From NCBI RefSeq assembly GCF_016432865.1, contig NC_067402.1, positions 2,046,001-2,110,000 of the forward strand: DNA of 64,000 nt, in the 5' to 3' direction. This DNA comes from Antechinus flavipes (lineage: Eukaryota). Of the stretch, positions 4,819 to 63,262 are shown one piece after another. The position numbers were made by a program, and so were the translations under genes. The notes beneath the pieces are model-generated. The model searched no databases and was not told the DNA's origin. It worked only from the letters and a program-made list of their open reading frames with translations. The first letter of the stretch is position 1. Each line of letters begins with the position of its first letter.

Positions 4819-5186
4819 GTGAGCCCGGGAGGGTGGCTGTGGAACCCCGAATTGGGCCCAGAATCACGGGGCTCCGGGTCGGGCTCGCCGCTGTCTGGCC
4901 GGGGACCCGGAGAGCTTTCTGGAGCCGTTGCTCCCAGCCTCGCCCCCTGCCCGGACCCCCCCGTTCCAGGCCGGGCTCCCCTCGGCTCGGGCCCCTCACC
5001 TGCCGGCCCTGACGCCGGCCCCGTTGGGAGCAGCCCGCACTGAGGGAGCTCCTGCGGGCCCAGCGCCGGCCGTGGGGAGCAGAGCCCGGCCTCCTCTGCG
5101 GCCTCGCTGCCCCGTTCCCCGCCCGGCCGGCCCGGGGCTTTGAGCGGGGGTCCAGCGTGAGGCCGGTATCGGCCCCGCCCCTCGCC

Positions 5187-6483
5187 ATGAGCGGCTCCAA
5201 GCCGGACATCCTGTGGGCCCCGCACCAGCTGGACAGGTTCGTGGTGTGCGACTCGGAGCTGAGCCTGTACCAGGTGGAGCCGGCGGGCAGCTCGGAGCTG
5301 AAGGCGGGCTCCCTGCGGCTGTCGGAGGACACGGCGGCCACGCTGCTCTCCATCAACTCGGACACCCCGTACATGAAGTGCGTGGCCTGGTACCTGAGCT
5401 ACGACCCCGAGTGCCTGCTGGCCGTGGGCCAGGCCAACGGGCGCGTGGTGCTCACCAGCCTGGGCCAGGACCACAACTCCAGGTTCAAGGAGCTGATAGG
5501 GAAGGAGTTCGTGCCCAAGCACGCGCGGCAGTGCAACACCCTGGCCTGGAACCCGCTGGACAGCAACTGGCTGGCGGCCGGCCTGGACAAGCACCGCGCC
5601 GACTTCTCCGTGCTCATCTGGGACATCTGCAGCAAGTACAGCCCCGAGGCCGCGCTTCCCCTGGAGAAAGTCAGGCTGTCGGCCGGGGACGCGGACGCGG
5701 GCTTGGTGGTGACCAAGCCCCTGTACGAGCTGGGCCAGAACGACGCCTGCCTGTCCCTCTGCTGGCTGCCGCGCGACCAGAAGCTCCTCCTGGCCGGCAT
5801 GCACAGGAACCTGGCCATTTTCGACCTGCGGAACACCAGCCAGAAGATGTTCGTCAACACCAAGGCCGTCCAGGGCGTGATGGTGGACCCCCACTTCCAC
5901 GACCGCGTGGCCTCCTTCTACGAGGGCCAGGTGGCCATCTGGGACCTCCGGAAGTTCGAGAAGCCCGTGCTGACCCTGACGGAGCAGCCCAAGCCTCTGA
6001 CCAAGGTGGCCTGGTGCCCCACGAGGACGGGGCTGCTGGCCACGCTCACCAGGGACAGCGACATCATCCGGCTGTACGACATGCAGCACACGCCCACGCC
6101 CATCGCCGACGAGACGGAGCCCACCATCATCGAGCGCAGCGTGCAGCCCTGCGACAATTACATCGCCTCCTTCGCCTGGCACCCCACCAGCCAGAACCGC
6201 ATGATCGTGGTGACGCCCAACCGCACCATGTCCGACTTCACCGTGTTCGAGCGGATCTCCCTGGCCTGGAGCCCCGTCACCTCCCTGATGTGGGCCTGCG
6301 GCCGGCACCTCTACGAGTGCACCGAGGAGGGCAGCGACCCCGCCGCGGACAAGGACATCGCCACCAAGATGCGCCTGCGGGCCCTGTCCCGCTACGGCCT
6401 GGACACCGAGCAGGTCTGGAGGAACCACGTGTTAGCCGGCAACGAGGACCCCCAGCTGAAGTCCCTCTGGTACACGCTCTACT
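5187..6483 (+). CDS. MIOS: MIOS coding exon 1 (WD40 propeller), 1297 nt
   Basis: GCCATGA start at 5187; ends at the U12 donor ATATCCTTT (6484). Confidence 0.96.
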
Positions 6484-43990: not shown

Positions 43991-44469
43991 AAAAGGATGT
44001 GGGTAGAGGCTATATCTATCGTCAAGAAAAAAAGACTTAAAACCAGCCTATGTTGCCGTTGCTCATTCCCAGTACTCCATTGGCCAGCTCACTGCTTTTG
44101 CCTGACATGATCTTTGCCTGTCTCTTAGAATTTACGGTTTCCTTCAAAACTCAATTCAAGCACCATTTTCTGCTGGAGCTCTTTGCTGGGTCACTTCTCC
44201 TCTCTGCCACTTACTAATACCTTCCCTTCTCCAATTATTTATTTTTGGCTAATATTCACACAGCTGTTCATGTTGCCCCCACCCACTCTGTCTTAACTTG
44301 TGTATTCCGGTATTAGAATGCAATTCCCTTCACGATTAGTACTTCTTAAAGGTGCCTTGCTGAGCTTGATTTCTCAAGTTCAGAATGTCTGAGCAGAGCT
44401 CATTTCCCACCAGCTGGGCTCACAAACTGAACTTGTCCCTCACAATGACCCGCTTCTTATCTCATCTGT

Positions 44470-45340
44470 GCCGAATTTTGTACCTTTTCCTTCCACATAC
44501 TGTTGGTTTTAGATAAATACTGCTTATGATTTTAAGGAAAGCTCCCTTTATCCCTGTGCTCTCCAGTGTTTTTAATTGGAATGGGTGCTGTATTTTGTCA
44601 GAAGCTTTTTCTGCATCTATTGAGATTATCATATGATTTCTGTTGTTTTGTTCTTGATATGGTGGATTAGGTAATAATTTTCTGGTAATGAACCAATTGT
44701 CCATTCCTGGTATAAATCCTACTTGGTCATAGTGTATTAACCTGCTGATAAGCTGCTATAATCTCTTTGCTAAGATTTTATTGAACATTTTTGCATCAAT
44801 ATAACAATTATGTCTGTTTCGGCTCTTTCAGGTTTAGGTATCGGTACCATATTTGTGTCATAGAAGCAATTTGGCAGGACTTCTTTACCCATTTTTCCAA
44901 ATAGTTTACACAGTAGTGGAACTAATTATTCTTTAAATGTTTGGTAGAGGTCACTTGTGAATCCATTTAGTCCTGGAGATTATTTCTTAGGGAGTTCATT
45001 AATGGCTTCATTTTTTTTTTTTTTCTAAAATGGGACTAGTTAAGTAATTTATTTCCTTTTCTGCTAACCTGGACAATTTATATTTTTCTAAAAATTGATC
45101 TATTTTGGTTAGATTGTCAGATTTGCTGGCATATAGTTGGGCAAAATAGCTCGTAATTAATGTTTTAATTTCTACATCATTAGTGCTACTTCCCTTTTGA
45201 TTTTTTGATGCTGTTGATTCATTTTTTTTCTTTTCTTTTTCTAATCAAATTAACCAAAAGTTTATCTATTTTGGTTCCCCCTCCCCCATAAAATCAACTC
45301 TTTTTATTAATTCAATCATTTTCTTAGTTTCAATTTTATT
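44470..45340 (-). mobile_element. L1 ORF2 fragment
   Basis: TTTTGTCAGAAGCTTTTTCTGCATCTATTGAGATTATCATATGATT is the antisense of the [20 protein letters not shown] region. Confidence 0.85.
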
Positions 45341-45399
45341 CATTTCTCCTTTGAGTTTCAGAATATCTCATTTAATGGGCCTCCTTGACTCCCAGACAA

Positions 45400-46240
45400 G
45401 CCTCCAGTGCTGCCCCTGTGCCTGCGATGCCCTCCCTCCTCCCCTTTACCTTGGAGCATTTTTCTTTCCACTCTCCACTCTCCTGGGCCTTCCTGGATTC
45501 CCTGTATTGTTCATGGCTTCCCCCAAATCCGTGTCCTTATTATGACCTGCCAGTAGAATGAGAAGACCCGCAATAACCCCCCCCCCCCCCGCAGGGTATG
45601 TCTCCAGCTCCTAGGCCAAGCTGCCAGAGAGGAAGGACCCTCCAAGAAGTCCAGTAGAACTGTGGGGAATAGCGGCTCAGAGCTGCTGTCCGATGGCCGC
45701 CACACCGCCAGAGTTCTCTGAGCTTGCCCTCTCTCCCGCAGAGGACGGACTGTTGGCCAGCCTTTTCAGCGGGGCCTGATTCTTCCTTGCCCTTATGCAC
45801 CCTGCCATCCTTAAGCTAGCCTCCTGTACTTTTCCTTCCTCTCACGGCCACTCCTGGGGAATCTCTGGGAACACCCTGCTTTCCTTTTCTCGCACAAACT
45901 TCTGGATCTCTTGAATTCGGCTTCTGATGGCCCAGGTAAGCTCGGACCGCCCTCTCCAAGACTCCCAAGGATCTAACGGTTGCATCCAGAGGCCCTTTCT
46001 CCCTTGTTCTTCCTGTTGGCCGCCTCGGGCACTCGGGACACTCTCCCCGACCTGGACGATCCGACACTGCCTTCTCCGAAGGTTCTCCCCGTTGGTCCAT
46101 TTCTTCCTATTTCCACAGTCCTCCCACCTCGACCTGCACGTGGGCGCCCCACTCCTCTTCCTGCTACGTCTCAGCTCCCCCGGGGTCCCGACGCCTCTAT
46201 GAACGATTCCATTCCCTCCGTGTCCCGTGTCTCCTCCCAA
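45400..46240 (-). mobile_element. Possible decayed gag-like LTR-element relic
   Basis: Frameshifted KLRELWR/VWRPSDSSSEPLFPTVLLDFLEGPSSLAAW weakly resembles SCAN/Gmr1-Gypsy capsid. Confidence 0.2.
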
Positions 46241-47269
46241 GCTGACTGCCGGCGCTCACCGGGATGGCCGGGGGTCACCTTCCTCTCAGCACGTCCCGAA
46301 CTGGAGGAGAGGCGAGAACTGCCCGTCACCGTTGTCGGGCGGACGCGTAGACTGCAGGTTTCCGGGTTAAGGCTCCCTCCGACGCCTCTCCCTCAGCCTC
46401 TGTGGTCACCCAGCTCGGGCCCCAGGGGAACCCAGGGCCGCGCCGCGGCAGGCCGGGTGACCGGTGCTGGTTCTGAGGGAGCTCACGGCCTGGCGGAGGG
46501 GACTTGGTCCGGGCCACGGACACTGAGCGTGGACAGTGGGAGCGTCTCCCGGGGGAGGCCAGTCCCGGGGGCCGCAGGGCTTCCGCACCTCCCGCCGTGG
46601 CCTCTCCCCGTCTTGCTTAGGGCGCTGACCCCTCGCTGGAGCCCTCCCACGCCCACGCAGCCTCCCGGGGGTCTCCATCTTGCCCCTCGGACTCTGCGGC
46701 CAGCAAGTGGTGGCCCGTGGAGACGCTGGCCGGGGCTGTCCTGGCCGAGGCGGCTTTAACAACCGTCTCCGTAGCGCCTCCACATCGGTCACTGGAGGAG
46801 ACGCTCGGGTGGTCCCCCAGCCCCGGTGGGGGAGGGGTCCCCTGCGGTCCCGCCGCCCCCCCGGGTTCGCACCTTCCCTGCTCCGCCCGCCCATTCAGGC
46901 TGCCCCGCGGGCTCTCCTTTCCCAGCTCGCTCCCCGCGGGCCGCTGCCCCAAACCCGGACGCGACGCTCAGTGCCAAGAACACAGCCGGCGCTTCATCGC
47001 TGCTGTTTGTCCTTCGCTTTAAGAGCTCGCTGACATCAGGGAGCAGAAGCGAGGGGGGCTGGGCGAGGTCACCTGCCTTCTGGAGCCACCTGCCTGCAGG
47101 TGGAAAGGTGAAGTCTCAGGAGGAGCCCCGCCTCCCCCGCCTGCAGTGTGCGGATTCCTGGCTGCCTTCGGGGACCTGGGCCAGCTGCAGGAACTTGGGC
47201 TAGGTAAGGCTGGGCTCTAGCCTCAAAGTCTTCCAGCTTCTGCCCGGCCCAGCGTGGGCAGGTGCGCCC

Positions 47270-47811
47270 GGGAGGAGGGAGGGGCCAGGAGAGGAGCGCG
47301 CACGCGCAGACCCCGCCTTCCCTCCGAGGCTGTCAGTTGGGCGCCCCGCCCCCTTCTTTCCCGCGCACGCCCCGCCTCCGCGGCACCACCTGCACCCTCC
47401 ATTGACCGACGCACCCGTCGCTCCCGAGCTGGGGCCAATGAAAGCGCGGCACCGGGGGGCGGTAACAGGAGGCGGCGGCGGTGACAGGAGGCGGCGGCGG
47501 TGACTACGGCGGCTGCTCCGAGGAGCTGCGGGAGCGGAGGCGGAGGCGGACGCGGACGATGTGAGCGGGCTCCCAAGCGGGTCCTGTCGGCGGCGCCATG
47601 GGGGCGCCGGGCCCCGGCCCCGGCCCCGGCCCCGGCCCCGGCTCCGGCTCCGGCTCTGGTCCCGGGTGGCAGCGGCGGCTGAGACGGCCTTGAGCCCCAG
47701 GAGCCGAGCCCACCCCGGGGGCGCGCCCCGCCCACGCCCGCCGGGCACGCGCCCTCGCTCCCGCGGCGCGCCCTCCCCTCTGTCCTCCTCGCCCCCTCCC
47801 CTTCCCGGGCC
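47270..47811 (+). promoter_or_regulatory. GLCCI1 CpG-island promoter and GC-rich 5' leader
   Basis: GC boxes, CCAAT at about 47436, a duplicated GGAGGCGGCGGCGGTGAC unit and a (GGCCCC)5 run upstream of ATG 47812. The TSS position cannot be read from sequence. Confidence 0.75.
47598..47693 (+). CDS. Candidate uORF, 31 aa: MGAPGPGPGPGPGPGSGSGSGPGWQRRLRRP*
   Basis: GCGCCATGG Kozak context; stop TGA 47691-47693, out of frame with and 118 nt before the GLCCI1 ATG. Translation not demonstrated. Confidence 0.5.
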   Translation: MGAPGPGPGPGPGPGSGSGSGPGWQRRLRRP

Positions 47812-48088
47812 ATGTCGGCAGCGGCGGCGGCTGGGGGCTCAGTGGGCTCGGCTGGGGGTCCCGGCCCCGGCCCCGCGCAGCCCCCGCCCCCGCCGCCCCC
47901 CGCCGGGCCCCGGATGCGGCGCAGCGCCGCCAGCTCCCCCACGGCCCCGGGCGCCGGCCGCCTGCTGCAGCCCATCCGCGCCACAGTGCCCTTCCAGCTG
48001 CTGCGTGGGGGGCCCAGCCCTCCGGCCCCCGACCCCCCGAGGCCCCAGGGCCGTCCCCGGCGCAGGAGCGGCTCCCCGGAGCCCCGAG
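47812..48088 (+). CDS. GLCCI1: GLCCI1 (FAM117 family) coding exon 1, 277 nt
   Basis: RMRRSAASSP and GAGRLLQPIRATVPFQLLRG match human GLCCI1 as recalled; donor CGAG/GTAAGG, phase 1. Confidence 0.92.
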
Positions 48089-50099
48089 GTAAGGGCGCTG
48101 GGGGAAGGAGAGGCATGGGGGCGTGGCGAAGAGAGCCTCGGCTGGAGCCTCCGGGGAGATGTGGGAAGGGGCTGACCCGGGTGGACCCCCTCGGGGATGG
48201 GGTGTATGTGTGGGGAGGCTCGCGCGTCTGTGTGTGCATTTGGCGGAGCCCCAGCGCTCCCGGGGGGCTTCTGGGCCAGCAGAGCCCTTGGCGGTATGAA
48301 CTGCCCCTTGTCATACCGGGTTGGGCCGGGCAGCGCCATGGGGGTCCTGTAATTGGTGCTCGGCGGGAGGCCGCCCCCTCCCCTGCCCCGCCCCCATCGC
48401 CAGCTGCTGCAGAAACTGACAAGCTCCCGCAAATCTCGAATGAATGAATGAAAACGACGTGATCGCCCTGATAATGCCCCACGCGTGCGCGGGTGATGCC
48501 CTGCTCCGCTCCCCCCTTGCAGACCGTGCCCTCCCCCCGGGACTTGCCACGTCGCGCGCGAGGTCCCCGTGGGTGTCCTCTTGGAGGATTCGGGAGCCCC
48601 ACGACCCCCCTCCCCCCAGGAGCAGCGGATTTTCTTTCCCCGTGACTGCAGAGCCGATCCCCGGGATCCAGGCCCGGGGCCAGGCCAGGCCCTGCTACTC
48701 CTGCTGCCGTGACGTCACTCCAGCCACTGATGAATGAAAACGGCGGCCCTGCCCCCCCTCCCCCAGGAGTGGCCCCTGGGCAGCCTAGCTTGGGGGACGG
48801 GGGAAGGGCTCCGTGGGTGGGAGTGGCGTCATGAGTGGCCGGCTTCTGCGGGCTGCTGAGGTCAGGGCTGGGAGGGTCAGGGGGCGGCCGCCGGCTCCCC
48901 ACGGCTCACTGACCTGGTGGCAGGAGGATTTTAAAAGCTGTCTGTGCCAGACTGTTGTTTAACACGAAGTGGGGACGGTTTCTCCCAGTGTGAGCTTGCC
49001 CCCATCTCCCGCAGGTGGCTTTACACGTTGGAATGGACAAGGCCAGTTCTTGGCTCCACATCCAGAACATTGAGGAGGCTTTTATGCTAATCAGCCTTTT
49101 CCCTGATTGTTGGGGGTGGGACTTGGTCTGCCTAGTGGAGATGGGACCCTAGGAAGACCCTGATTTCCTGAAATTAGGACTAAGTGGCCAGAGGGGAGGG
49201 GGGAGGAGTTGGTTTGTTTCTTCCGAAACTTCTTCCCAGGTGGCTCTTGCCAAAGGCATCCAAAAGTAAGAGCGCTCCTTCCTGGAGGGGCTCGTTGCTA
49301 GGGGAGACTCGCTGCTCTTCAGACTGGTTCCAATTGTGGAAAACCAGAAAGCCTGAAAGGCCGCCAGTTACTGGGAATAAGGGAGTCCCCTCGTTTCAAG
49401 TCGCAAATTCCCCTTTGAACCAGGGACCAGATTTTCCAAAACTGTGGGGAAGATGTGACCATTGGCGCTCTTCCCGCACTCCTGGCCGGACTTGGCCGCC
49501 GAGAGGTCTCCCAGGTAGCTGATGGATGGCCAGGGCTGCTTGTGTTCCTCCGTTTTACATGCATGGGCCCACCCGGCCGGCTCTTACGCCTCCCCACGGG
49601 CTTCGCTGGCTTGCCTTGGGCCTGCACTGACCTTTGGGACTCCCGGAGAGATCCGTGTCCTTAGCAGTGTTCTTCAGCCTGGACCCCATCCCGGAATTAG
49701 GCTTCTCCTTGTGGAAACGGCCTTTAGGAAGCGAGGCTACCTCAGCCAGGGACCTAGAAGGAGGGGGCTTTGCGGCTGGAGCGCTCGGCTCGCCCTTCCC
49801 TCTGTACTGCTGTGGGCTTATTTATGGCCAGCTCCGGGGCTCGAGCAGGCGCTTCATGATCCGGAGGCGCAACTGGATCATTTTAAAGAACTCGCATGTG
49901 TGGTTGGGGTTTTTTAGTCTTTGTGCTTTTTGAGGACGCCGGCACGGGAACGGGTCATTAGCCATAACGCAAAGGTTCTGCTCATTCGATTGGTCCCGCC
50001 ATTTCTCCGTCCAGGGAGCTGGGAGAAATTCAGTCTCCCTTTGGGATGGAGCTTCTTGGCATTCACGCAGGGAAAGCCGCTTCCTTCCCCAGCTTTCCA

Positions 50100-50420
50100 C
50101 ACAACTGCAACATCACGTGCACATGCATGTATACCTATGTGGTGTGTACACTGCAGGCGTGTAGTTGTGCATGCACGTGTGTGCGTTCTGTGCAGGAGTG
50201 TGTGGTTGTGTGTGCACATACATGTGTGCATATTGTGCATACGTGCGTTTGTGTGTGCACACATGTGTGTACTGTGCATTGTGTGGTTATGCGCGCAAGG
50301 CATGTGTGCATGTGTGTTTGTGTGTGCACACACATGCATGTATCATGCAGGATTATGAGGTTGTGTGCGCACATGCGTGTGTGCATATTGTGCACGCGTG
50401 TGTGGTTGTGCATGCATGTG
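50100..50420. repeat. Degenerate (TG)/(TGCA)-rich simple repeat
   Basis: About 320 bp alternating purine-pyrimidine tract. Confidence 0.9.
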
Positions 50421-51849
50421 TTTCCCGGTGCCTCAGCTCTCCAGCTCTTTGGTGCGCCCGGCACATGAGCTGATGGCCAGGGCCGGGATTTGTCTCTCCT
50501 GGGCACAAAGCCTGCCCGCGGTGCTCTCGCGGACGCCTCGGGAGGAGGCCCCGACATCCCATAGTGGGGACCGGCTGCTTTGCAGAACTCCCCGTTCCAT
50601 CCGTCAGTCGCCATCTCTCCTCAGGGGCCAGAACGCCAAGAGAGGCCCGCAGACATGTGAGAAAGCGCCGAGAGTGTGTTGGGGAGTTGGCCCCGAGCGC
50701 CTCCAGCCCTGCAGGGGCGGTGGGCCTCGCCTCCCCTTTGCCCCTCCTCCTTTTCTCGCTCAGACTGCGAGCTCCTTGGGGGCAGGAGCTGCCCTTCTCC
50801 CTCTCTGCGCCCTCAGCGCAGCGAGTGCAAGTGCTCCCCGGAGGCTCGAGCCTTGGGCCGCTTTGCTTGTTGTTCACGGCTGGGAGACGAGAGGAATGGA
50901 CTGGGCCAGCGGAGCATGACGGCCTAGAAGAGGCGGGGCCGGGGGCCGGGTCTAGGAGTGGGTCAAGCGGGCTTGAGCAGTGCGCTCCTGGGCAGAGCCG
51001 CTCCAGGGCCCTTTCTCGATCTTCGTGGGTGGACACGTGGCTCCTCCTGCTCTTTGGACACGAACCGGGACTTTGTTCTCTTTTCCCCAAGAAGCGGCGC
51101 CCCGGGAGCAGGAGCTTCCAGCTCTCCCACCGGGGGCTCGGAGCCGGAGCCGTCGGCAGCCATCTCTGCGGCGGGCCCAGCGGGCTCTTTGAGAACGCCC
51201 AGCGTGGGTTGAAGCTCGCGTAGGAGAATTGTGATTGAGAAATGCAGCAGAGTCCGGCCACAGTGGGCCCCTGCGCTGTCCCCTGCCTGGTGGGGCAGGC
51301 AAGCAGAATTCTGTTTTCTTGGGTGGGCCCAGGCCGAGGGCGCCTCTGCCCTTCCCCAGGCTTCCCTCGGGCTCTCCTTCAGTTGGGACCACTCATTGAA
51401 GCCAGCTTTGATGGGGCACAAAGAGGCAGAAGGTGCCCTCCTGGTCTTTGCGTTGGGTCTCAGAAAACCAGAGCCGTGTCTTTCACAGAAAAAGGGGGTG
51501 TCCTTGAAGAGAATGGGGCTGCGTGATGGAGCCATGGAGACTCCTTGTGGAGAGGAAAAGGCCCGATGCTCCTGGTGTCGACTCCACCCCATCAGTTGCC
51601 AAGGAAGAAATTGTAGGTGTCCAAGCTGTGGCCAGAGAGCCAGAGGCGGCCAGAGGGATGGAGGCAGTCAGAGGGCCGGCCGCAGCCCTCGGGAGGCCTC
51701 CCCCGCAGCCGTTCAGGAGTCCATGCAGGAGGTGATGAGGGCCTGCCCAAGGTGGGAGCAACGTGAGAGTGTGAGGGTCCGGTGGTGGGACACTCCGAGT
51801 CATCGCGTAGAGAAGGTGACCAGGTGGCTGGTATTAGAAAGGAGAAGAG

Positions 51850-54800
51850 GAAATCAAAGCAATCTTAAGTAATTATTTTGCTAATAAATTTAGCACTTTG
51901 AGTGAAATGGAAGAATATTTGCAAAAACGTAAATTGCCTTGATTAGCAGAAGGGACTTGGACTAGCTAAATAAACTAATTTGGGAGAAAGAAATTGAACA
52001 AGTCATAATTGAGCTTCCCAAGAAAAAATGGACCAGATGAATTTCCAAATGAATTCTCTCAAACATTTAAGGATCAACTAATTCCAGTATTAAATAAATG
52101 ATTTGAAATAATAGGCAAAGAAGGGCTCCTACCAAAGTCCTTTTATGAAACAAATATAATACTGATATCTAAACCAGGAAGAGTGAACACAAAGAAAATT
52201 ATAGATCAATTTCATTAATGAATATGGATGCAAAAATCCTGGGGGAGGAGGGAACTAACTAGAAGATTACAGTAACATATTGCAAAGGTTGTACATGGTG
52301 ACCAAGTGAGATTATAGTAGAAGTGCAGGCATAGTTTAACACAAGGAAAACTATTGATATGATTGATTATGTCAGTAATAAAAATAACAATTATGTGCTA
52401 ATATCAATAGATGCAGAAAAAGCTTTTGATTAAAAAAAAACCCACTGATTCCTATTTAAAAGGCTTGAAAGCCCAGGTATAGATGTATTTTCACTTAAAA
52501 TGATTAAAAGCGTCTCCCTAAAACCATCAGTAAGCATTATTTGTAATAAGGATAAGTTAGAAGTCTTTCTAGTAAGGTCACCTGTCACCAGTATTATTTC
52601 AACATTGTATTGGAAATCCTAGCAATAACAGTAAGAGGAAAAAAGAAATAGAAGGAATCAAAATGGGTCATGAGTTAAAAATATAGATGATAATATAATG
52701 TATTTGGAGAATCATAATAAACTAAAAGTTAATTGCAACAACAATTTTAGCAAAGTAGCAGGACATAAAGTAAACCCACATAAAGCATTAGCATTCCTAT
52801 ATATCACCAACAAAACCCTGCAAGAAGGGATAGTAAGAGATACCCCATTTAAAATAACTGTAGACAATATAAAGTATCTAGGAATACATCAGGAACTATA
52901 TGAACAAAATTATTAAAAAAAACAACCCTTTTTATCCAAATAAAGTCAGTTTTAAGTAATTCGAGAAATATAATTGTATTTATGGGTAGGCAGAGCCAAT
53001 ATTAAAAAATGAGTGTTATCTCTATTCCATGTCATCCCAATTAAATTACCAAAATTATTTTATTGAATTAGAAAAAAATAACAAAATTCATTGGAAGAAA
53101 AAAAGATCAAGAATATCCAAGTAACTAAAGAAAATATAAAGAAAAGAGGGTTAGCAGTACCAGATCTTAAAACTACATTATAAGCAGTAATTATTAAAAC
53201 TATTTGGTATTGCCTGAGAAACAGAAATGTAGATTAGTAGAACAGAGGAGACATATCAACAGCAAATGACGGTAGTAACCTTGAGTTTGACAAATGTAAA
53301 GACTTAAGTTTTAGGAATCAGAATTCATTGGTAAAAATTGTTGGGAAAACTGGAAAAAAAATCTGGCAGAAATTGGATATAGATTAATATCTTATACCAT
53401 TTACCAAAAATAAGGTCAAAATAGATTCCTGAACCTAGGTATAAAAGGAGATATTACAAGAAAAATTGAAAAACATAGAACATATTACCTATCAGACTTA
53501 TGGACAGGTGAACAATTTAGGAATGAACAAGAAATAGAGCATTGTCAGGTATAAAATGGATAATTTTAATTATTTCAAATTAAAAAGCTTATTATAAATA
53601 AAATCAATGTAACTAAGATCAAAAGAAAAACAATTTTTTTGGGAAAATTTATAAACAGTAAGGTCTCAAGTCTCGAATATATAAAAACTTCACCAATTCT
53701 AGAAGAAAATAACCATTCTCACAGAGAGGATTGGTGAGATTTACATGAACTGATGCTAAGTGAAATGAGCAGAACCAGGAGATCATTATATACCTCAACA
53801 ATGATACTGTATGAGGATGTATTCTGATGGAAGTAGATATCTTCGACAAAGAGAAGATCTAACCCAGTTTCAATTGATCAAGGATGGACAGAAGCAGCTA
53901 CACCCAAAGAAAGAACACTGGGAAATGAATGTAAACTGCTTGCATTTTTGTTTTTCTTCCCGGGTTACTTCTACTTCTGAATCCAATTCTCCCTGTGCAA
54001 CAAGAGAACTGTTTGGTTCTGCACACATATATTGTATCTAGGATATACTGTAACCTATTTAACAAGTATAGGACTGCTTGTCATCTGAGGGAGGAGGTGG
54101 AGGAGGGAGGGGAAAAATCGGAACAGAAGTGAGTGCAAGGGAAAATGTTGTAAAAAATTACCAGGCATGGGTTCTGTCAATAAAAAGTTAATTTAAAAAA
54201 AAAAAAAAGAAAGAAAAGAATCATTCTCTAGTTGTTAAATGAGAAAGAATATGTACAGGTAGATTTCTGATGAAAACAAAATCATTACTGACAAGAGGAT
54301 GCAGATTAAAACAACCTTGAGGCATCATTTTGCATTTATCAGATTGGCTAAAATGACTAAAAAGGAAAGTGACAAGTACTGGAGAGGATGAGAAAAATAG
54401 GGATGTCATTTCAGTGTTGGTGAAGTTGAATTGATGCAGCCATTTTAAAGAACAATCTGGAATTATACCCAAAGTGTTATAAAACCGTGTATACCCTTTG
54501 ATCTGGCAATACAATTCTCAAACGTGTGTCCCAAGGTGATAAGAAAAAAGGAAAAGAACCCATGTGTTCTAAAATAGTACTAGCAGCTCTCTTTGTGGTT
54601 GCAAAGAACTAGAAATTGCAGAGATGCCCATCAATTGGAGAATGGCTGGACCAATTGTGGTATATGATCATGACGAAATCCTACTATGCTATAAGAACTG
54701 ATGAGCTCAGTAACTGTAGAAAAAGACCTGCATGAAATAATGAAGAGCGAAATGAAGAGAACATTGTACATGGTAATAGCAATATTGTGTTTTTTCCCAA
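51850..54800 (+). mobile_element. Old AT-rich L1 ORF2 relic (about 3 kb) containing a nested younger L1
   Basis: TCAATAGATGCAGAAAAAGCTTTTGA, AAAGTAGCAGGACATAAAGTAAACCCACATAAA and other collinear ORF2 motifs. Confidence 0.9.
53721..54210 (+). mobile_element. Young 5'-truncated L1 3' end with poly(A) and target-site duplication
   Basis: AATAAA plus A-tail at about 54179-54210; 18-bp flanking repeat AAGAAAATAACCATTCTC (53703-53720) / AAGAAAAGAATCATTCTC (54211-54228). Confidence 0.85.
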
Positions 54801-54829
54801 TTGATAGTATTTTATTTTTTCCAATTACA

Positions 54830-55230
54830 TGAAAAGATAGTTTTCAGCATTTACTTTTATAAGATTTTTGAGTTCCAAATTTTTTTCTCCCTTTCCTTCC
54901 CTCTTCCCAAGACAGCAAGATATTTATATATATGTATATATACATACATATACACATATATATAAAGATTATACATGTACATGTTGTGAAAGAAAAATCA
55001 AAACAAAAGGGAAAAACCACAAGAAAGAAAAAAGCAAAAAAAAACTGGAAATGGCCTGCTTCAATCTGCATTCAGTCTCCGTAGTTCTTTTTCTGGATGC
55101 TGACGGCTTTTTCCATCCTAGATTGGAATTTTCTTGGATTGCTGTATTGTTGAGAAGAACTAAATTTGCATAATTGATCATCTCCCAATCTATTGTTTTA
55201 AGAACAACTTTGGGCAAATAAGTCATTTTA
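54830..55230 (-). mobile_element. L1 3' end fragment
   Basis: CATTTACTTTTATAAGATTTTTGAGTTCCAAATTTTT...TGCTTCAATCTGCATTCAGTCTCC, an antisense marsupial L1 3'UTR. Confidence 0.8.
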
Positions 55231-56404
55231 ATTATTATAAATACCCAAATCAACTACAAAGGATCTAGGGAGGAACGCACTATCTACATCCACAAAAAGA
55301 ACTGATAAATAGCAGAGTGCAGAATGGTTTTACATGCATACATACACACACATGCACCAACACATATATATGTATATATGTATGTACACACACATTTATA
55401 CACATATATTTGTGTCTAACAGCCATCTGTAGGGCGGGGCATTTGAGGAGGGAAGGAAAGTAGATTAAAGTTGCACAGCAGAGAACAAAAGGAAACGTAG
55501 AAGGAAAGCCGAGGAGCTTTGAAAATCACCAGAGCTACTTATACAGATTTTCAAAAACAGACAACTGAAATGTAAATTCGTGGCTTTGCAGGGAATCCTC
55601 CTTTTAGGGTGTGCCGAACTCTTATGTCCTTTTTTTGTCTATATATTTTAAGTTTGAAATGAAAAAAGTTTAAATTATTTAAGAAGCTGATGAAAATGAA
55701 AATGAAAAGAAACGAAAGTGACCGGGGAATCTGGAAGAGGCGGGGCTGGGTGATGGAGTTGGGGGGGGGGGGTCTCATCAGCGGCCAAGCTGGGGTCTGG
55801 AGATGAGCAGAGATGTTTACAGGAGGCTCCGGCACAAAGCCCTGCAGGGTGCCCGCCGCCAGGCCCCAGGGTATTTTCAGCAAGTCTGGTTCTCCGTGAC
55901 TCCATTTGGCAGAGGTGCTTGGGGGGTTTGCCATTTCCTTCTCCTGCACATTTTACAGATTGAGAAATGGAGGTAGATGGGAATGCTGGGGCCTGATGCC
56001 CCCTAGTGCCGGTAGAGTCCCTGGGAAGCCATGCTGGTGCTCCCACTTATCCAAGGCTTGGTGCTCCCCCTGAGCTAATCCAGAAACCTTTTCTGGATCC
56101 CCCCCTCCCATCTCAGCTTATTCTGTTTGGACTCGGCTCTGGGTGTGTTGTCCCTTGATCCTCTCTGCCCTCAGTCCAAGGGAAGGTCCTGGAGGTTTGT
56201 CTTTATGTCCTCAGCCCAAGAAAGTAGATGCTTTAAATCGGCTTGGATCCTCGTCCCCTTTCACCTCTGACCCATGGCCTGGCCTCCCTCCCCATTATTT
56301 CTTGGACAGTGCCGATCTGGAGAGAATATCCCCTTTGTTCAGGGCATGGGCCAGTTCCAGATGAGTTCTTCCACACCTTCATACCTGGTGGAAATTCTGT
56401 GTGT

Positions 56405-57290
56405 TTCAAATTTTTTTTAAATTAAATTTTATTTTTTATTATAGCTTTTTATTGACAAAACATATGCATGAGTAATTTTTCAACATTGACCCCTGCAAAA
56501 CCTTCTGTTCCAACTTTTTCCCTACTTCCCCCAATCTCTCCCCCGATGGCAGGTAGTCCCATACATGTTACACATGTTAAAATATATGTTAAATCCAATA
56601 TATGTATACATATTTATATAGTTATCTTGTTGCACAGGAAAGATCGGATTTAGAAAGAAGGTAAAAATAACCTGAGAAGAAAAAATGCAAGGAAACAGTA
56701 ACAGAAAGAGTGCAAATGCTATGTTGTGGTCCACACTCATTTCCCAGAGTTCTTTCACTGGGTATAGCTGGTTCAGTTCATTACTGCTCTATTGGAATGG
56801 ATTTGGTTCATCTCATTGCTGAAGAGGGCCACGTCCATCAGAATTGATCATCATATAATCTTGTTGTTGTGTACAGTAATCTCCTGGTTCTGCTCATTTC
56901 CCTCAGCATCAGTTCCTGTAAGTCTCTCCAGGCCTTTCTGAAATCATCCTGTTGGTCATTTTTTACCAAACAATAATATTCCATAATATCCATATACCAT
57001 AACTTATTCAACCATTCTCCAATTGATGGGCAGCCACTCAGTTTTCAGTTTCTAGGGCCGCCACAAACATTTTGCACATGTGGGAACCTTTCCCTCCTTT
57101 AAGATCTCTTTGGGTATAAGCCCAGTAGAAACACTGTTGGGTCAAAGGGTGTATGATTTGGTAGCTATTTGGGAATAGTTCCAGATTGCTCTCCAGAATG
57201 GTTGGATCTGTTTACAACTCCACCAACAATGTATCAGCCTCCCGGTTTCCCCACATCCCCTCCAACATTTGTTGACATCTTTTCCTGTCG
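56405..57290 (-). mobile_element. Relatively young L1 3' end (poly-T at left)
   Basis: TTTTTATTGACAAAACATATGCATGAGTAATTTTTCAACATTGACCC...TTGCTCTCCAGAATGGTTGGATC; same family as 53721-54210, opposite strand. Confidence 0.9.
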
Positions 57291-59999
57291 CCTGATGGGG
57301 ATTCTCAAGAAGCTGCCTTTGGATGTGTCGGCAGAGCCTGTGCCTGGTGACCCTCATGCTGTTCCCTGACAACATGAGGAAGCTGCCATTTTGCCTCAGT
57401 AGCCTGGCTCCTTTTGGAGATTTCCTAAATGCAGTTTTTGCATGGAGTGATTTTCTTTTCGTGATCATGCTCTAGGTCCAGGGGACTGGTAACCATATGG
57501 ACTTCTGATTGCTTCCAGTAGGAGAGACTTAGGAAATAGGAACGGGACGATCTCTTTTTTCCTCATCGATCCTTGTAGCTGATGGGAATGGTGGGGTGAT
57601 CAGGAGGCAGCCTTTTCCCGAGAGAGACTCGTGTGTCTGCGTGTGCGGTCAGTGCCGCCGTTTGCGAGTTTGGTGTAGACGGCGCCATGGCCACGCCAGG
57701 AGTTTTGCTTTTTTTCTGTGATTGCAGTGGGCCGCCCCCTTGGGACACCCGGAGAGGCCCTGGTCTGGGCTTTGGCAGGTCCGGGCAGTCCGGCCCATTC
57801 TCTGGCCGAGTAGACTCCGGGCTCGGGTGCACCCGTAAGTGGGCGTTTCAGAGGGGGTCCTCGTGGAAGGAGCAGGAATTCTCCAGACCCACTCAGGGAC
57901 TCGGGCAGGAGGCCCCTTGTCGTAGAGCTGGCTTTCTCTGGGGCATTTTGCTCAGCACAGAGGACCTTCATCAGGATACCACTGGGGAGACCCTCTCCAA
58001 AACACTGACACCCTTGGGGCCGGGACTGCTTTTTCCAGCCTCGAAGCTGCCCCTGCGCTTGGTCCTCAGAGCCCTCTGCAAGCCCGGCCCAGCGCCTGGG
58101 GGCCGGGCCTTTCTCGGCTGATGTGGGGTGCCCCCGCCCTGCCAGGGTGGCCGTCCAGCCTCTGCTCTGGCTGCTCCTCCCCCCGCCGGACTCCACTTAG
58201 TCCCTAAGCTCAGGAAGTCCTCAGGAAGGACTTGGGATGCTTGAGATGCAGGCTGACTAACGGAGGGAATCCCAGGAGGGCTGACGCCACCTTCCAAGGT
58301 TATTGCTTTGTTGAGGGAAGCTGGTCTCCAGCCCGGTCCCCTTCCCCAGCGGCTCCCGGCCTTTCTGATGCGTCCCAGACGATGCTTTCTGGCGCTCGCT
58401 TCTCCCTCAGCCTCCCTTTGGGGGCGCTGTGGAGACCTCTTGTCTCCTATCCAGCTTCTGGGGAGGGGATGACAGATGGCCTTTTCATGGGAGAGACGAC
58501 CTTGGATCTGTCCTGGTTCCCTCTGTGCCGTCCTTAGGTTGGATGGACGTCCGGCCGAGGCCGGTTATTTTCCTTCCACGGTTTTGGCCGTGCTCCTGCT
58601 TGTCAGGGAGGACGACGGAGCTGTGCCCACCGGATCTTGCGCAGCGCATCCTCCGTGTGCCCAGGTGAATTCTAACGCCGCCAGACCGGCGAAAGGCCAG
58701 CTTGGGCATGGCCACTTACTGGAGAGGCTTCTGGGGTTTGGCGGGGTAATCCACCTGCCAGGTGAGGAGGAGCCACAGAGCTACATCTGAATCTTTCAGG
58801 TCAAATAATAGTCTCAAAACCAGGAACCCCCGGGCAGAGCCGAGCCCCCGTGTTCAGTGCGAGAGAGCCGGACTTGGCGCCGGCTGCCCGTGGAGGCCGA
58901 TCTTGGGGCTCTCTTGGTCTTGGGGAGCTTGTTCCCCCCCATTCTATAGGGAGGCATCAGCCCTGAGCGTTCGGGGCTGGAGCCCGGTGGGAAAGTGCTG
59001 CAGACTCTTCCCTTTGATGTCTCCAGGGAAACTCGTTCCCAGTTTACTGTGTACGGGGGAACCGTCCTGGCAACGGGCATTAGTAGCATGGCATGGTACT
59101 CGCAGTTCCACGGTGCCTCCAAGTTAAGGTGCTTTGTAGAAATTCCCTTTTATCCTTCCGACCACAGTCACTGTCTGTTTCACAGACACGGAGGCGAGCA
59201 CGTTGAGAGACGTGTCCAGGATGACATCAGTAGCCGGTCTCGGCTTTGGATTCAGATTCTGCGGGTCCGGAGTCTTGGGCCCAGCCTATATGGGGCAGAA
59301 AAAGGGACTTTCAGGTTCTCTGGCGGCCTGCAGGGGCTCAGTCTTTTCTTGTGGACTTAGTAGGCCGGAGTAGACACTGGTCAGGCCAAATAGAAGCAGA
59401 GGTTTGTTTTCGCCACTAAGGCCAGTAGGTACTTTATTTACTTTATTGGCACCGTGCTGCCCTCCCTGTGTAAGCTTCCTGCCGTGGCTTTCTTTTCTTA
59501 TTCCTTTCTCAGGTTCTTAGATCTCCTGGTGTTTTCCAGGAAACGGCCTAGAGGTCAGCTTGGCTCTGTCTCCACGCAGGAGCTGTTGGGGTGGGGGGCG
59601 GGGCCTCTCTCTGCCAGGTACTGAGGGTACTTCCGGACTAATAGGAACACCTAATATTTTCCCTTTTGACTCATTTGAGACGAGGCAATTCCATAATAAT
59701 TAGGAAATATTTTGATTGCTCGATTCACCACTAAATAGAACCTCTAATCACGACTGTAATCAGGAAACAATTTGTTGTGCTGAAGAAATAATTAATGCAT
59801 AGCCATCTGCATTTTCCAGTGCTGCATTAAAATGCTCCAATGTCTACTTGAGGGTGAGGAGACAGAGGACAGAGGCAAAGTTGGGCGCTGACCGTGGTGG
59901 GAGCAGAATATGAACAGAAGCTTTGAAAAGGGAGATGGGTTCTCCTTTCCTTGCCAAGAAATCCAACTTAAATGAGATGAAATTACCCCCCCCCCCCAC

Positions 60000-61260
60000 C
60001 GCCATGTTCAGATTAACAGAACAAGAAATAGAAAACTTAAATAACTGAATCACAAAAAAAGGAATTAAACCATCAATGAAATCCCAAAGAATAGTCCTTA
60101 AGGCCTAACAGACTTACAAGTAAATTTTGTCAAACATTCAAAGAGCTCATTCTAAAGCTATATATAAGCAAAAATATAAAAAAGGATCCTGCCAGTTTCC
60201 TTCTGTGATACAAATATGGTCTTCATACCTGAACCAGGGAGAATAAAAAGAGAGCGAGGAAACTTGAGCAGTATCCTAATGACCACTGAAGCAAAAGTTT
60301 TAAATAACAGATTAGTAAAGAAGCTCCAACAGCATCTAAAATAAAGATTATATCAGTTGGGCTTATACCAGGAATTCAGAGTTGGCCCAATCTTAGGAAA
60401 ACAATAAAAATAATCAACATAATAGCGACAGCAACAAATGTGATTTCGGAGGTGCAGACTCTTAACCAAATGTCATATCTATCCCTATTGAAAAATAACC
60501 ATCACATGTGTATAAAAGGTGCATCAGAAAACACAGGACTAGACCTTTTCTTGATGTGATGAAAAGTTTTTGTCTCCAACCTAGACTTCTATGTAATGAG
60601 GATGAGCGAGAAGTCTTTTTAATAAAATCAGGGGTGAAGCAAAGCTGCCATCGTCGCCACGACCATTTGGTCCAGCACTAGAGATGCTCGCTTTAGCAAT
60701 GCGATGAGAAAAATAAATTTGAGGGAATGTCAGGCAAAGAGGGAACAAAATCATTGATTCTTTTGCAAATGATATGAGGGAAATTAATGGGAATTATAAC
60801 TTCTGCAAAATTACACAATATAAAGTAAATCCCCATAAGTATTCACCACTTCATTTTGCCAATAAAACCCAGCAGGAAGGTGTTGAAAGAGAAATTCCAC
60901 TCCAGATAACCAGAGAGTATAATAAAATAGTTGAGAATCTCCCCGGGAAGGTTCACTCAGGAACTGTACGGATGCAACTAAACTAAGCATCATTTACAGA
61001 AATAAAGGTAGACCGAAATTAATATAGGAATATTAATTATTCATGGTTAGGATGAGCCAATATCATGGCAATTCCATCTCATCTATCTATTCACCCTGCC
61101 GAAAAATTACTTCATAGAGGTAGAAAAATTGGAATTCGTTTAGATCAAAGATCGGGAATCTCAAGGAAAATAATGAGAGAATAGTAGGAAGGAAAGGGAC
61201 TTGGTAAGACCTGATCTCACACTGAACACTCAAATAGTAATGAAAATGATGTCATGCTTG
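60000..61260 (+). mobile_element. L1 ORF2 relic
   Basis: AAATCAGGGGTGAAGCAAAGCTGCC, TTTGCAAATGATATG (FANDM from FADDM) and AAAGTAAATCCCCATAAG. Confidence 0.85.
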
Positions 61261-62845
61261 ATTTTAAACAAAAGTGGGTCAGTGGAACATCATCGACCCA
61301 GGGCTTCTTAAACTTCTTCCATTCACAAGCTCTTTTTGTGCGACCCCACCCCGAATGGAGCCAAGTGTTTCTGGCAGGTTCGCGTTGGATCAGATTTTGG
61401 ATTCACTGCGTGTTTGATTGTGGCTTCGTATTTGAAGCCTTTTAGGATTTTTTTTTTTTACACACACCCACCCCGCCTTCAGTTATATGTGGGATGGGAC
61501 TCACAGTTTAAATTACCGCTCAGTGCCGGGCCGAGGCAGAGAGCTGGGGACCGACGGTCAGAGAGTCCCCCGGAGGAACAGCTTGCTCAGGATCGGCACA
61601 GACTGCCAGCCCAACCGGAAGCCAGGCTGCCGGCAATGGGATTTAGACGGGGACCTCGTACCGCTCGCCAAGAGAAACTCCAAACGGAAAAGTAACGGTC
61701 ACAGAGGCATCCTGGAGCGAGTGAGAAGGCACCGGAGAGAAAATGCCCCATTATCGAATATGTGAAATAAAGCGCTTTTTGTAGAAACAGAACAGCTCAG
61801 AAGACGATGGGTACCTGCAGGGAAAACCCTGGCAGCGACTTGCTGAGAAAGGTATAGAAGGAACCAGTTAAAAGAGGTGGGAATAAAAGGCTTTCTTTTA
61901 TTTCTGAGCCATTAAAAGGACAAGAACAGGCAATTCCCCAGGGAAGAACCCAAACTACAAGAAAGAGGTGCCCCAGTCCAGCCCGGAGGGTCCAGTGAGG
62001 CTGACTGGGAGATTTCCTCCATCCCTGTGAGGTCCCCAGTTGCAGAGGCCAGCTGGACCCCCAGACCCAAGAGAACCAGAGGGGAGAGAGGAGGGTCCCC
62101 GTGCCCAAAGTCCTGAGGTGGCTGGGGAGGTGCCAGGAGGAGAGCGATGGCGGGCACAGCCTGGAGCGGCTGGGGAGCCCTTGGGGCACCCAGGTGGTGG
62201 GCAGTGGCCACGGCCAGGCTCATGCAGCCAGTGGGTGAGGGGGTTCAGACCCAGCCCTTTTGGCCCCAGAGTCTTGCCCTCAGCAGCGACCAGTTACAGA
62301 GGGTTCCAGAGTGTCTGCTGCCAGAGGCAGCCAGCCCCACGGCAGGGGTGCCCGTGGGCTCTGTTCTGGGTGCAGGGCATGAGATGGAGGGGGCAAAGGG
62401 CTTAGTCAGTGAGACGAGTAATGGCCGCTGGCTGGCGAGGAGGGGGAGAACTGGGGTCCTGCGAGCAGATGCTGGGGGCTTCTCAGTGCTTTGGAATGGG
62501 CTCTGAGGTGGGAGAGCCATGCCCCAGGGCAGGCCAGTGGGGAAGTCACTGCAGCGCTCTGGACCCCCAGCGCTAAAAAGGACCCCCAGGGACAGCGCCG
62601 GGCCAGGAGGAGACTAGTGAGGGGAGTCTCTCTTCCCTTCTCTGCTTTGTCTGATGGCCACTAGTCTTGGGGCGGGGTCTTGGTTGGGGCTGCTGAGTAG
62701 AGATCCCTCAGGCAGGGGACAGATACCAGCCCCAGGACCCTGTCCCTAGGTGGCCCCCGCTCGGCCTTCTGCCCCCCCCTTATCTTCCTTCATGACTGGG
62801 CGACGTGATTCCCCCATTTGTCTTCTGAAATTGTCCTTCTTGTAG

Positions 62846-63262
<417 letters not shown>

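What the first reader, a model, noticed from the sequence alone, without database searches (positions are those of the whole stretch)
47598..47693. Perfect-Kozak uORF that translates a (GGCCCC)5 repeat into poly(Gly-Pro) upstream of GLCCI1
Seen: GCGCCATGG opens a 31-codon ORF, MGAP-(GP)5-(GS)3-GPGWQRRLRRP*. Its core is five perfect GGCCCC units (47610-47639; GGGGCC on the other strand) decaying into GGCTCC. Its context is stronger than the main GCC-ATG-T at 47812. Known: GGGGCC is the C9orf72 repeat, which forms G4/hairpins and yields poly-GP; expansions of GC-rich repeats within uORFs produce toxic peptides (FMR1, NOTCH2NLC). Inference: a natural ATG-initiated dipeptide-repeat micropeptide and a repeat-length-tunable translational brake on GLCCI1, possibly lineage-specific.
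Basis: partly seen in the sequence, partly recalled or inferred. Interest (0 to 1): 0.7.

Follow-up and report, generated by a model that had tools for sequence, protein, structure and literature searches.

The report
Gly-Pro repeat uORF before GLCCI1
A short upstream reading frame that runs through a five-unit GGCCCC repeat really does sit in the leader of the GLCCI1 gene, but it looks like an ordinary, fast-changing upstream ORF that mildly damps translation, not a special C9orf72-like dipeptide-repeat device.

Summary
ATG 47598 (ggcgccATGg) opens 31 codons ending at TGA 47691-47693. They run through (GGCCCC)5 and three GGCTCC-type units and give MGAP(GP)5(GS)3GPGWQRRLRRP.

The gene downstream is a FAM117-family gene. 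Exon 2 (63084-63236) matches Pfam PF15388 at E 1e-16. MIOS lies upstream, so synteny makes the gene GLCCI1.

Contigs from one RNA library and one probable RNA run of two related organisms cover 47498/47535 to 47795/47827 without a break. No depth lies upstream of 47471. The uORF is therefore probably in the mRNA leader. No raw reads were served, so no start site is proven.

Three things argue against the stronger reading:
- The mRNA carries the C-rich strand, so it has no RNA G-quadruplex and folds worse than shuffles.
- Five units are far below any known toxic length.
- In one close relative the repeat zone is 7 letters shorter and the stop is CGA, so the peptide tail is not conserved.

A strong-context uATG with an ORF of 25 codons or more arises in 11% of shuffled leaders.

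Verdict: a real but ordinary, labile uORF built on a slippage-prone microsatellite, probably a modest translational damper. It is a new member of a known kind, and interest is low to moderate. The scan has not noted this on other DNA; one other repeat-uORF note exists in this genome.

The parts
47435..47439 (+). The only CCAAT box of the core promoter, in a TATA-less CpG island with GC boxes at 47346 and 47457. It lies 60-100 nt upstream of the 5' ends of the RNA-run contigs.
   Evidence: Motif scan; CpG observed/expected 0.65-0.89 and GC 0.67-0.83 over about 46000-48700
47458..47504 (+). 19-bp tandem repeat, 2.5 copies, directly upstream of the inferred start zone
   Evidence: TRF, 96% matches; 1-nt indel at 47486 in runs X1 and X20
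47498..47535 (+). Inferred transcription start zone, given by the 5' ends of contigs in RNA-type runs. Inferred, not shown.
   Evidence: X5 contig starts at 47498 and X10 contig at 47535; both runs have no depth upstream of 47471, while the DNA run X20 covers 46933-47598
47559..47564 (+). ATG-TGA start-stop element (context cggacgATGt), 34 nt upstream of the uATG
   Evidence: ATG scan
47598..47693 (+). The uORF: 31 codons plus TGA, in a different frame from the main ORF
   Evidence: Translation; ATG scan
47610..47665 (+). Hexanucleotide microsatellite: (GGCCCC)5, then GGCTCC, GGCTCC, GGCTCT, GGTCCC. Read as (Gly-Pro)5(Gly-Ser)3 Gly-Pro. GGGGCC on the template strand forms the only predicted G4 here (47618-47639).
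   Evidence: TRF; G4 motif scan; fold with G4 enabled
47694..47811 (+). 118-nt spacer between the uORF stop and the main ATG. It holds no ATG. The main frame is closed upstream by TGA at 47680.
47812..48088 (+). GLCCI1 coding part of exon 1 (92 codons plus 1 nt); donor G|GTAAGG at 48089
   Evidence: Translation; sequence
48089..63083 (+). Intron 1 (14,995 nt), GT...AG
   Evidence: Sequence
63084..63236 (+). GLCCI1 exon 2, the start of the FAM117 domain. The phase-1 join with exon 1 keeps the frame.
   Evidence: Pfam PF15388, E 1e-16, profile positions 1-38; sequence

Best explanation
This is an ordinary AUG-initiated uORF in the CpG-island leader of GLCCI1. It probably arose because a slippage-prone GGCCCC microsatellite lies downstream of an ATG in DNA so GC-rich that stop codons are rare. 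Proposed mechanism (inferred from the scanning model, not shown): transcripts start around 47500-47535. Scanning 43S complexes first meet the AUG-UGA start-stop at 47559, then the strong-context AUG at 47598. Those that initiate there translate 31 codons and terminate at UGA 47691. Only some reinitiate at the main AUG 118 nt downstream. The net effect is a constitutive, modest reduction of GLCCI1 translation. The Gly-Pro/Gly-Ser peptide is a by-product with no function of its own. The repeat matters mainly as a source of rapid length and frame change.
For: The ORF, repeat and contexts are as described. Gene identity: FAM117 domain on exon 2, MIOS upstream, and consensus splice sites with matching phase. 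Probable transcription: in X10, a recorded metatranscriptomic RNA-Seq run of 395 Mb, contigs cover 47535-47598 and 47668-47795. In X5, a 61-Mb run, one 326-nt contig at depth 25 covers 47498-47827. Neither has depth upstream of 47471. Runs this small cannot reach depth 16-32 from genomic DNA of a large genome. The CCAAT box at 47435 lies at the usual -60 to -100 from that zone. Lability: organism A has 7 fewer letters inside 47599-47667, and T>C at 47691 turns TGA into CGA. Chance level: P about 0.11 for such a uORF in shuffled leaders. The same GGCCCCGGCCCC motif also occurs in the main CDS (47863-47874, also read as GPGPGP) and at 11517, so it is a local sequence habit. uORFs are typically inhibitory, and repeat-bearing uORFs are a described class (PMC10027321).
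Against: No raw reads were served, so no 5' end, strand or expression level is shown. X5 is only guessed to be RNA, and CpG-island promoters are also enriched in ATAC, ChIP and reduced-representation libraries. CpG-island promoters start transcription at scattered sites, so some transcripts may begin downstream of 47598. There is no ribosome profiling, so initiation is only predicted. The upstream start-stop, 34 nt before the uATG, could let reinitiating 40S subunits bypass the uATG and weaken its effect. The relatives' sequence inside the repeat zone was hidden by the tool, so conservation of the TG of the uATG (47599-47600) and the exact tract length are unknown.
Confidence: 0.6

Rival explanations
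1. The ATG and repeat are promoter DNA only. Most transcripts start downstream of 47598, and the stretch acts, if at all, at the DNA level. Possible DNA-level roles are the GCCAT/ATGGCG core of a YY1-type site at 47595, GC-rich factor sites, or a G-quadruplex on the template strand that affects Pol II or keeps the island open.
For: TATA-less CpG island with scattered GC boxes. GCCATG occurs at both 47595 and 47809. A G4 is predicted only on the minus strand at 47618-47639, where allowing a G4 lowers the folding energy from -62.8 to -83.3 kcal/mol. No read-level start site is available.
Against: Contigs in an RNA library (X10) and a probable RNA run (X5) begin 63-100 nt upstream of the uATG and run through it, with no depth further upstream. 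The minus strand has 50 G4 motifs in this window and 7 within 46000-49000, so this one is not special.
Confidence: 0.2
2. One reading: a selected, ATG-initiated dipeptide-repeat micropeptide whose repeat length tunes GLCCI1 translation. Gly-Pro runs would slow elongation and so reduce reinitiation, and the peptide itself might be active or toxic.
For: Strong start context and a short uORF with a 118-nt spacer make translation likely. The tract length differs between close relatives. Contigs of three runs break at the tract, which fits heterozygous or longer alleles. Precedents exist: the FMR1 CGG repeat acts as a uORF on FMRP, and there are the NOTCH2NLC AUG-uORF polyG (PMC10027321) and the AUG-initiated C9orf72 antisense polyPG (PMC7024836).
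Against: The length change in organism A is 7 letters, not a multiple of 3 or 6, so the tail frame shifts. The stop codon is lost there as well. That is the opposite of purifying selection on a peptide. Five units are tiny, and polyPG at 100 repeats was expressed at low levels with limited toxicity (PMC7024836). The sense RNA has no unusual structure (z = +2.8 for the leader; -60.7 against a shuffle mean of -71.1 kcal/mol for the local segment). The chance level is 11%.
Confidence: 0.07
3. A two-element leader of the ATF4/GCN4 type. The start-stop at 47559 captures ribosomes, and 40S subunits resuming scanning cannot reload the ternary complex within 34 nt. They skip the uATG at 47598 and reinitiate at the main AUG. 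The balance between the two routes would then make GLCCI1 translation sensitive to eIF2 availability.
For: The geometry is right: start-stop, 34-nt gap, strong uAUG, 118-nt spacer. Start-stops are described as ribosome-halting, repressive elements that form part of complex leaders, including human ATF4 (bioRxiv 10.1101/2021.07.26.453809; PMC13338717).
Against: This rests on geometry alone. The start-stop context lacks G at +4. The uORF does not overlap the main ORF in this genome, so it is a weaker gate than ATF4 uORF2. There are no expression or stress data. X10's contig starts at 47535, only 24 nt before the start-stop.
Confidence: 0.1

Closest known systems
C9orf72 antisense C4G2 repeat with its AUG-initiated poly(Pro-Gly) ORF (Boivin et al. 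2020, PMC7024836; also noted in PMC10464328)
   Same: The RNA carries the C-rich CCCCGG/GGCCCC repeat. A canonical AUG upstream sets the Gly-Pro frame, and a stop follows soon after the repeat.
   Different: There the AUG is 194-195 nt upstream in a poor Kozak context, on an antisense transcript, and it matters at tens to hundreds of repeats. Here the AUG is 12 nt upstream in a strong context, in the sense leader of a protein-coding mRNA, with only five perfect units.
FMR1 CGG-repeat uORF (FMRpolyG) acting on FMRP synthesis (Rodriguez et al. 2020, as reviewed in PMC10027321)
   Same: A GC-rich microsatellite in a 5' leader is translated at native length. It behaves as an inhibitory uORF for the main ORF.
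   Different: FMR1 uses near-cognate (RAN) initiation and an overlapping frame. Its repeat is a G-rich triplet that forms stable RNA structure. Its function was shown by experiment, and nothing is shown here.
NOTCH2NLC uN2C polyG uORF (Boivin 2021 and Liu 2022, cited in PMC10027321) and further GGC-repeat ORFs in oculopharyngodistal myopathy (PMC12987736)
   Same: An AUG-initiated small ORF in a leader or 'non-coding' stretch has a GC-rich repeat embedded in frame.
   Different: Those are triplet repeats giving homopolymeric glycine and are pathogenic on expansion. Here a hexamer gives a dipeptide repeat, and no expansion is known.
Generic vertebrate uORFs (present in about half of human mRNAs, per bioRxiv 10.1101/2021.07.26.453809) and start-stop elements (same preprint; PMC13338717)
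   Same: Position, length, termination before the main AUG and the expected repressive effect. A start-stop sits next to the uORF.
   Different: Nothing essential differs. The low-complexity repeat content is the only unusual feature.

Membership tests
AUG-initiated uORF | An AUG upstream of the main AUG with an in-frame stop, on the sense strand of the gene | tested here: met
   ATG 47598, TGA 47691-47693, main ATG 47812, same strand, different frame
AUG-initiated uORF | Lies inside the mature mRNA 5' leader | tested here: inconclusive
   Contigs of one RNA library and one probable RNA run span it, starting at 47535 and 47498. Only contigs were available, with no raw reads and no cap data.
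AUG-initiated uORF | Ribosomes initiate there, and the main ORF output changes when it is removed | not testable with these tools
   Needs ribosome profiling and reporters
Repeat-embedded uORF (FMRpolyG / uN2CpolyG / C9orf72-antisense polyPG kind) | A GC-rich microsatellite lies in frame within an ORF opened by an upstream AUG or near-cognate codon | tested here: met
   Period-6 array 47610-47665 lies wholly inside the ORF, in the Gly-Pro frame
Repeat-embedded uORF (FMRpolyG / uN2CpolyG / C9orf72-antisense polyPG kind) | Repeat length is variable or expandable in populations | tested here: inconclusive
   Organism A has 7 fewer letters in the repeat zone. Contigs of X10, X20 and X1 break at the tract. 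The tool hides differences inside 47599-47667.
Repeat-embedded uORF (FMRpolyG / uN2CpolyG / C9orf72-antisense polyPG kind) | The repeat peptide is detected | not testable with these tools
   Needs a poly-GP immunoassay or mass spectrometry
C9orf72-type G4C2 RNA repeat (G-quadruplex or hairpin, RAN translation) | The transcribed RNA carries the G-rich GGGGCC strand and forms a G-quadruplex | tested here: not met
   The sense RNA is GGCCCC. The fold with G4 enabled finds none in the sense strand; a G4 appears only on the antisense strand. The only G4 motif here is on the minus strand.
C9orf72-type G4C2 RNA repeat (G-quadruplex or hairpin, RAN translation) | Repeat expanded to tens or hundreds of units | tested here: not met
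   Five perfect units, 9.3 including degenerate ones
Conserved-peptide uORF | The peptide sequence and stop are kept among related species | tested here: not met
   In organism A the stop TGA is CGA, and a 7-letter deficit shifts the frame of the tail. Only two relatives were seen, and only partly.
GLCCI1 (FAM117 family) as the host gene | FAM117 domain in the downstream coding exons, and conserved vertebrate neighbourhood with MIOS | tested here: met
   PF15388 E 1e-16 on exon 2. MIOS: PF21720 E 7e-216 and PF21719 E 1e-21, upstream on the same strand. Telling GLCCI1 from FAM117A/B rests on synteny and on my memory of the human protein, not on a database hit.

The most novel reading that the evidence does not exclude
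GLCCI1 in this lineage carries a naturally translated, AUG-initiated Gly-Pro dipeptide-repeat uORF. Its hexanucleotide tract varies in length among individuals and species. This variation would set, jointly with the adjacent start-stop, how much GLCCI1 protein is made. It would be a physiological, non-pathogenic counterpart of C9orf72 antisense polyPG translation and a source of baseline poly-GP signal.
Probability: 0.08. Interest if true: 0.55.

Novelty: new member of a known kind. Interest (0 to 1): 0.25.

Why it matters
GLCCI1 is a glucocorticoid-induced gene. Its promoter variants (rs37973) are studied as predictors of response to inhaled corticosteroids (PMC10265153, PMC6392942), so anything that sets its protein output is of some interest. 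If this uORF were shown to be translated, it would be a clean natural example of a canonical-AUG dipeptide-repeat ORF at non-pathogenic length. That would be useful as a control or background source for poly-GP assays and for studying how ribosomes handle Gly-Pro runs. As it stands it mainly illustrates a general point: microsatellites in GC-rich leaders create and remodel uORFs quickly, and most such uORFs are unremarkable.

Tried and rejected
**Protein searches on exon 1**
- The word search on the 211-aa read-through ORF, residues 1-93, found nothing.
- The word search on the 93-aa exon 1 found nothing.
- The full HMMER search of representatives gave two hits, both spurious: a repetitive 437-aa protein with an IL13Ra Pfam hit and a low-complexity 1461-aa protein.
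- Exon 1 is too low in complexity to fetch orthologues this way.
- Pfam finds nothing on exon 1 or on the uORF peptide.

**Other routes to orthologous loci**
- The metagenome scan with the 20-mer around the uATG gave 33 loci. A blastn of 44001-52000 against them found only one 31-nt match, so all are chance matches in GC-rich DNA, including one from a koala-associated assembly.

**Structure and RNA families**
- Rfam at gathering thresholds found nothing in the window.
- The sense leader has no special RNA structure (z = +2.8).

**Alternative splicing**
- I checked by eye for an alternative splice donor inside the uORF that could join exon 2. Only GTCCCG at 47659 has the right phase, and it is far from consensus. 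RNA-run contigs also run unspliced through 47668-47795. Rejected.

**Literature and earlier notes**
- The literature held no paper on a GLCCI1 uORF or repeat.

**Left out on purpose**
- I did not search the joined exon 1 + exon 2 protein. The exons were searched separately by reference.

Full report
**What is there**

- ATG at 47598 sits in the context ggcgccATGg. It opens 31 codons that end at TGA 47691-47693 and give MGAP(GP)5(GS)3GPGWQRRLRRP.
- Tandem Repeats Finder reports a period-6 array at 47610-47665 with 9.3 copies, 90% matches and consensus GGCCCC. Five units are perfect (47610-47639). They are followed by GGCTCC, GGCTCC, GGCTCT and GGTCCC.
- The uATG has a purine at -3 and G at +4. 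The main ATG at 47812 (cgggccATGt) has the purine but not the G. The uATG context is stronger, and 'near-perfect' describes it better than 'perfect', because -5 is G, not C.

**Is it more than chance?**

The repeat is. GGCCCCGGCCCC occurs six times in the window against 0.10 expected from shuffles.

The ORF is not.
- The leader is 82% G+C, so stop codons are rare.
- In 5000 dinucleotide-preserving shuffles of 47500-47811, 12.5% contained a strong-context ATG and 10.8% one with an ORF of 25 codons or more.
- The same 12-mer also occurs inside the main coding sequence (47863-47874), where it too is read as Gly-Pro-Gly-Pro, and at 11517. The motif is a habit of this GC-rich DNA, not something peculiar to the uORF.

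**Which gene**

- Pfam finds nothing in the low-complexity exon 1.
- Three protein searches gave no true relative.
- A motif I remembered from the human protein led me to an exon at 63084-63236. Its translation, given by reference, matches Pfam FAM117 (PF15388) from profile position 1 with E 1e-16.
- Exon 1 ends at 48088 before a consensus donor (G|GTAAGG). The acceptor is ...ttgcag at 63083, and the phase-1 join keeps the frame.
- MIOS lies upstream on the same strand: PF21720 with E 7e-216 at 5157-6491, and PF21719 at 7976-8965.
- A FAM117-family gene next to MIOS is GLCCI1 by vertebrate synteny. Telling it apart from FAM117A/B also leans on my memory of the human N-terminus, which is a lead and not a test.
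- I did not search the joined exon 1 + exon 2 protein. The exons were searched apart.

**Is it in the mRNA?**

Only Logan contigs were served, with no raw reads, so no start site can be shown. The contigs still say something.
- In X10, recorded as a metatranscriptomic RNA-Seq run of 395 Mb from related organism B, contigs cover 47535-47598 and 47668-47795 at depth 16-32.
- In X5, a 61-Mb run of related organism A guessed to be RNA, one 326-nt contig at depth 25 covers 47498-47827.
- Neither run has any depth upstream of 47471. The DNA run X20 covers 46933-47598 normally.
- Runs this small cannot reach such depth from genomic DNA of a large genome, so the material is enriched. RNA is the simplest source, although promoter-enriching DNA libraries are not excluded for X5.
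- The only CCAAT box (47435) lies 60-100 nt upstream of these contig starts, as expected for a TATA-less CpG-island promoter.
- I put the odds that the uORF lies in most mature transcripts at about two in three.
- All runs, including the DNA run, have zero depth at 47940-48073. The tool warns that records matching human DNA are dropped silently, so this hole is no finding.
To be open about it: the protein searches on the exon 1 translation were made after the reads call, by reference, and came back blank.

**What the relatives show**

The tool hides differences inside 47599-47667, so the tract itself cannot be read in the relatives. Around it the picture is as follows.
- Organisms A and B share T>G at 47571, C>G at 47698 and G>C at 47782.
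- Organism A has T>C at 47690, which is silent, and T>C at 47691, which turns the stop TGA into CGA.
- Organism B keeps the stop.
- The X5 contig uses 323 letters for 330 window positions, and no indel is listed outside the hidden zone. Organism A therefore has 7 fewer letters inside the repeat zone.
- Seven is not a multiple of three. If its uATG is kept, the frame after the tract would be the main-ORF frame, which is closed by TGA at 47680. This step is inference.
- On that reading an ORF of similar size may persist in A, but with a different tail. That is what one expects of a uORF whose peptide does not matter, or of no selection at all. It argues against a conserved micropeptide.
- Contigs of X10, X20 and X1 all break at the tract. 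The window's own perfect run (33 nt) is too short to confuse 31-mers, so the breaks hint at longer or heterozygous alleles. This is a hint only.

**The C9orf72 analogy**

- The mRNA sense strand carries GGCCCC, which is the C9orf72 antisense-type repeat (C4G2), not G4C2.
- With G-quadruplexes enabled, ViennaRNA finds none in the sense RNA. The antisense strand forms one (-83.3 against -62.8 kcal/mol without it).
- The only G4 motif at this place is on the minus strand (47618-47639). It is one of 50 such motifs on that strand in the window.
- The sense leader folds worse than its shuffles: z = +2.8 for 47500-47830, and -60.7 against a shuffle mean of -71.1 kcal/mol for 47585-47700.
- The precise known counterpart is therefore the AUG-initiated poly(Pro-Gly) ORF of the C9orf72 antisense transcript. 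Its AUG lies 194-195 nt upstream of the repeats in a poor context. It was assayed at 100 repeats, was expressed at low levels and showed limited toxicity (PMC7024836; PMC10464328).
- Five units are far from that regime.

**How it most likely works**

The following is inferred from the scanning model.
- A 43S complex loaded at the cap first meets an AUG-UGA start-stop at 47559-47564, and 34 nt later the strong uAUG.
- Ribosomes that initiate at the uAUG make the 31-residue peptide and terminate at 47691.
- Some 40S subunits resume scanning and reinitiate at the main AUG 118 nt further on.
- The expected result is a modest, constitutive reduction of GLCCI1 synthesis, as for most uORFs (PMC10027321; bioRxiv 10.1101/2021.07.26.453809).
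- Gly-Pro runs may slow elongation and lower reinitiation somewhat. This comes from my own knowledge of proline-rich motifs and is not tested here.
- The start-stop could add repression, or it could let rescanning subunits skip the uAUG. That ATF4-like reading is geometry only.

**Comparison and verdict**

- Repeat-bearing uORFs are a described kind: the FMR1 CGG uORF, the NOTCH2NLC uN2C polyG ORF, further GGC-repeat ORFs in oculopharyngodistal myopathy, and C9orf72 antisense polyPG (PMC10027321, PMC12987736, PMC7024836).
- This one is a new member of that kind. Its distinguishing points are a hexamer dipeptide repeat and a strong canonical AUG in the sense leader of a coding gene.
- No paper in the library links GLCCI1 with a uORF or a repeat.
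- This scan holds one other repeat-uORF note in the same genome (a CGG poly-glycine uORF at NDUFS8), which I did not check. It fits the view that such arrangements are common in GC-rich leaders.
The G4, toxicity, tunable-brake and functional-peptide claims do not.
- Interest is low to moderate.

Noticed in passing
window 47559-47564: An ATG-TGA start-stop element (context cggacgATGt) lies 34 nt upstream of the uATG. It is inside the leader if transcription starts at or before 47535. Start-stops are described as ribosome-halting repressive elements (bioRxiv 10.1101/2021.07.26.453809; PMC13338717).
   Followed up: partly
window 47458-47504: A 19-bp tandem repeat (2.5 copies, 96% matches) lies directly 3' of the only CCAAT box and just before the inferred start zone. 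Runs X1 and X20 show a 1-nt deletion at 47486 inside it.
   Followed up: no
window 47592-47608: The uAUG lies in the 5-nt loop of a perfect 6-bp GGCGCC/GGCGCC stem in the predicted RNA fold. The DNA also holds a GCCAT/ATGGCG core like that of YY1 sites, as does the main ATG at 47809.
   Followed up: no
window 47857-47905: The main GLCCI1 coding sequence holds its own GGCCCC x2 (read as GPGPGP), followed by CCCGCC-type repeats that encode a proline run. Many unrelated contigs pile up here in read laying (depth 4642 in X20), a low-complexity artefact.
   Followed up: partly
window 5157-8965 and 47812-63236: The locus is compact and GC-rich (55% over 64 kb). The MIOS exons are close together, and GLCCI1 exon 1 lies only about 40 kb from them. 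GLCCI1 intron 1 is 14,995 nt. From memory the human spacing is several-fold larger, with RPA3 and UMAD1 in between. I did not look for those genes here.
   Followed up: no
window 47940-48073: All four runs, the DNA run included, have zero depth over the conserved part of exon 1. This is most likely the tool's silent filter against human-like records, not a deletion.
   Followed up: no
loci L001-L033: A 20-mer spanning the uATG has 33 exact matches in metagenome contigs. None is homologous beyond about 31 nt. Short GC-rich patterns are not specific in that collection.
   Followed up: yes
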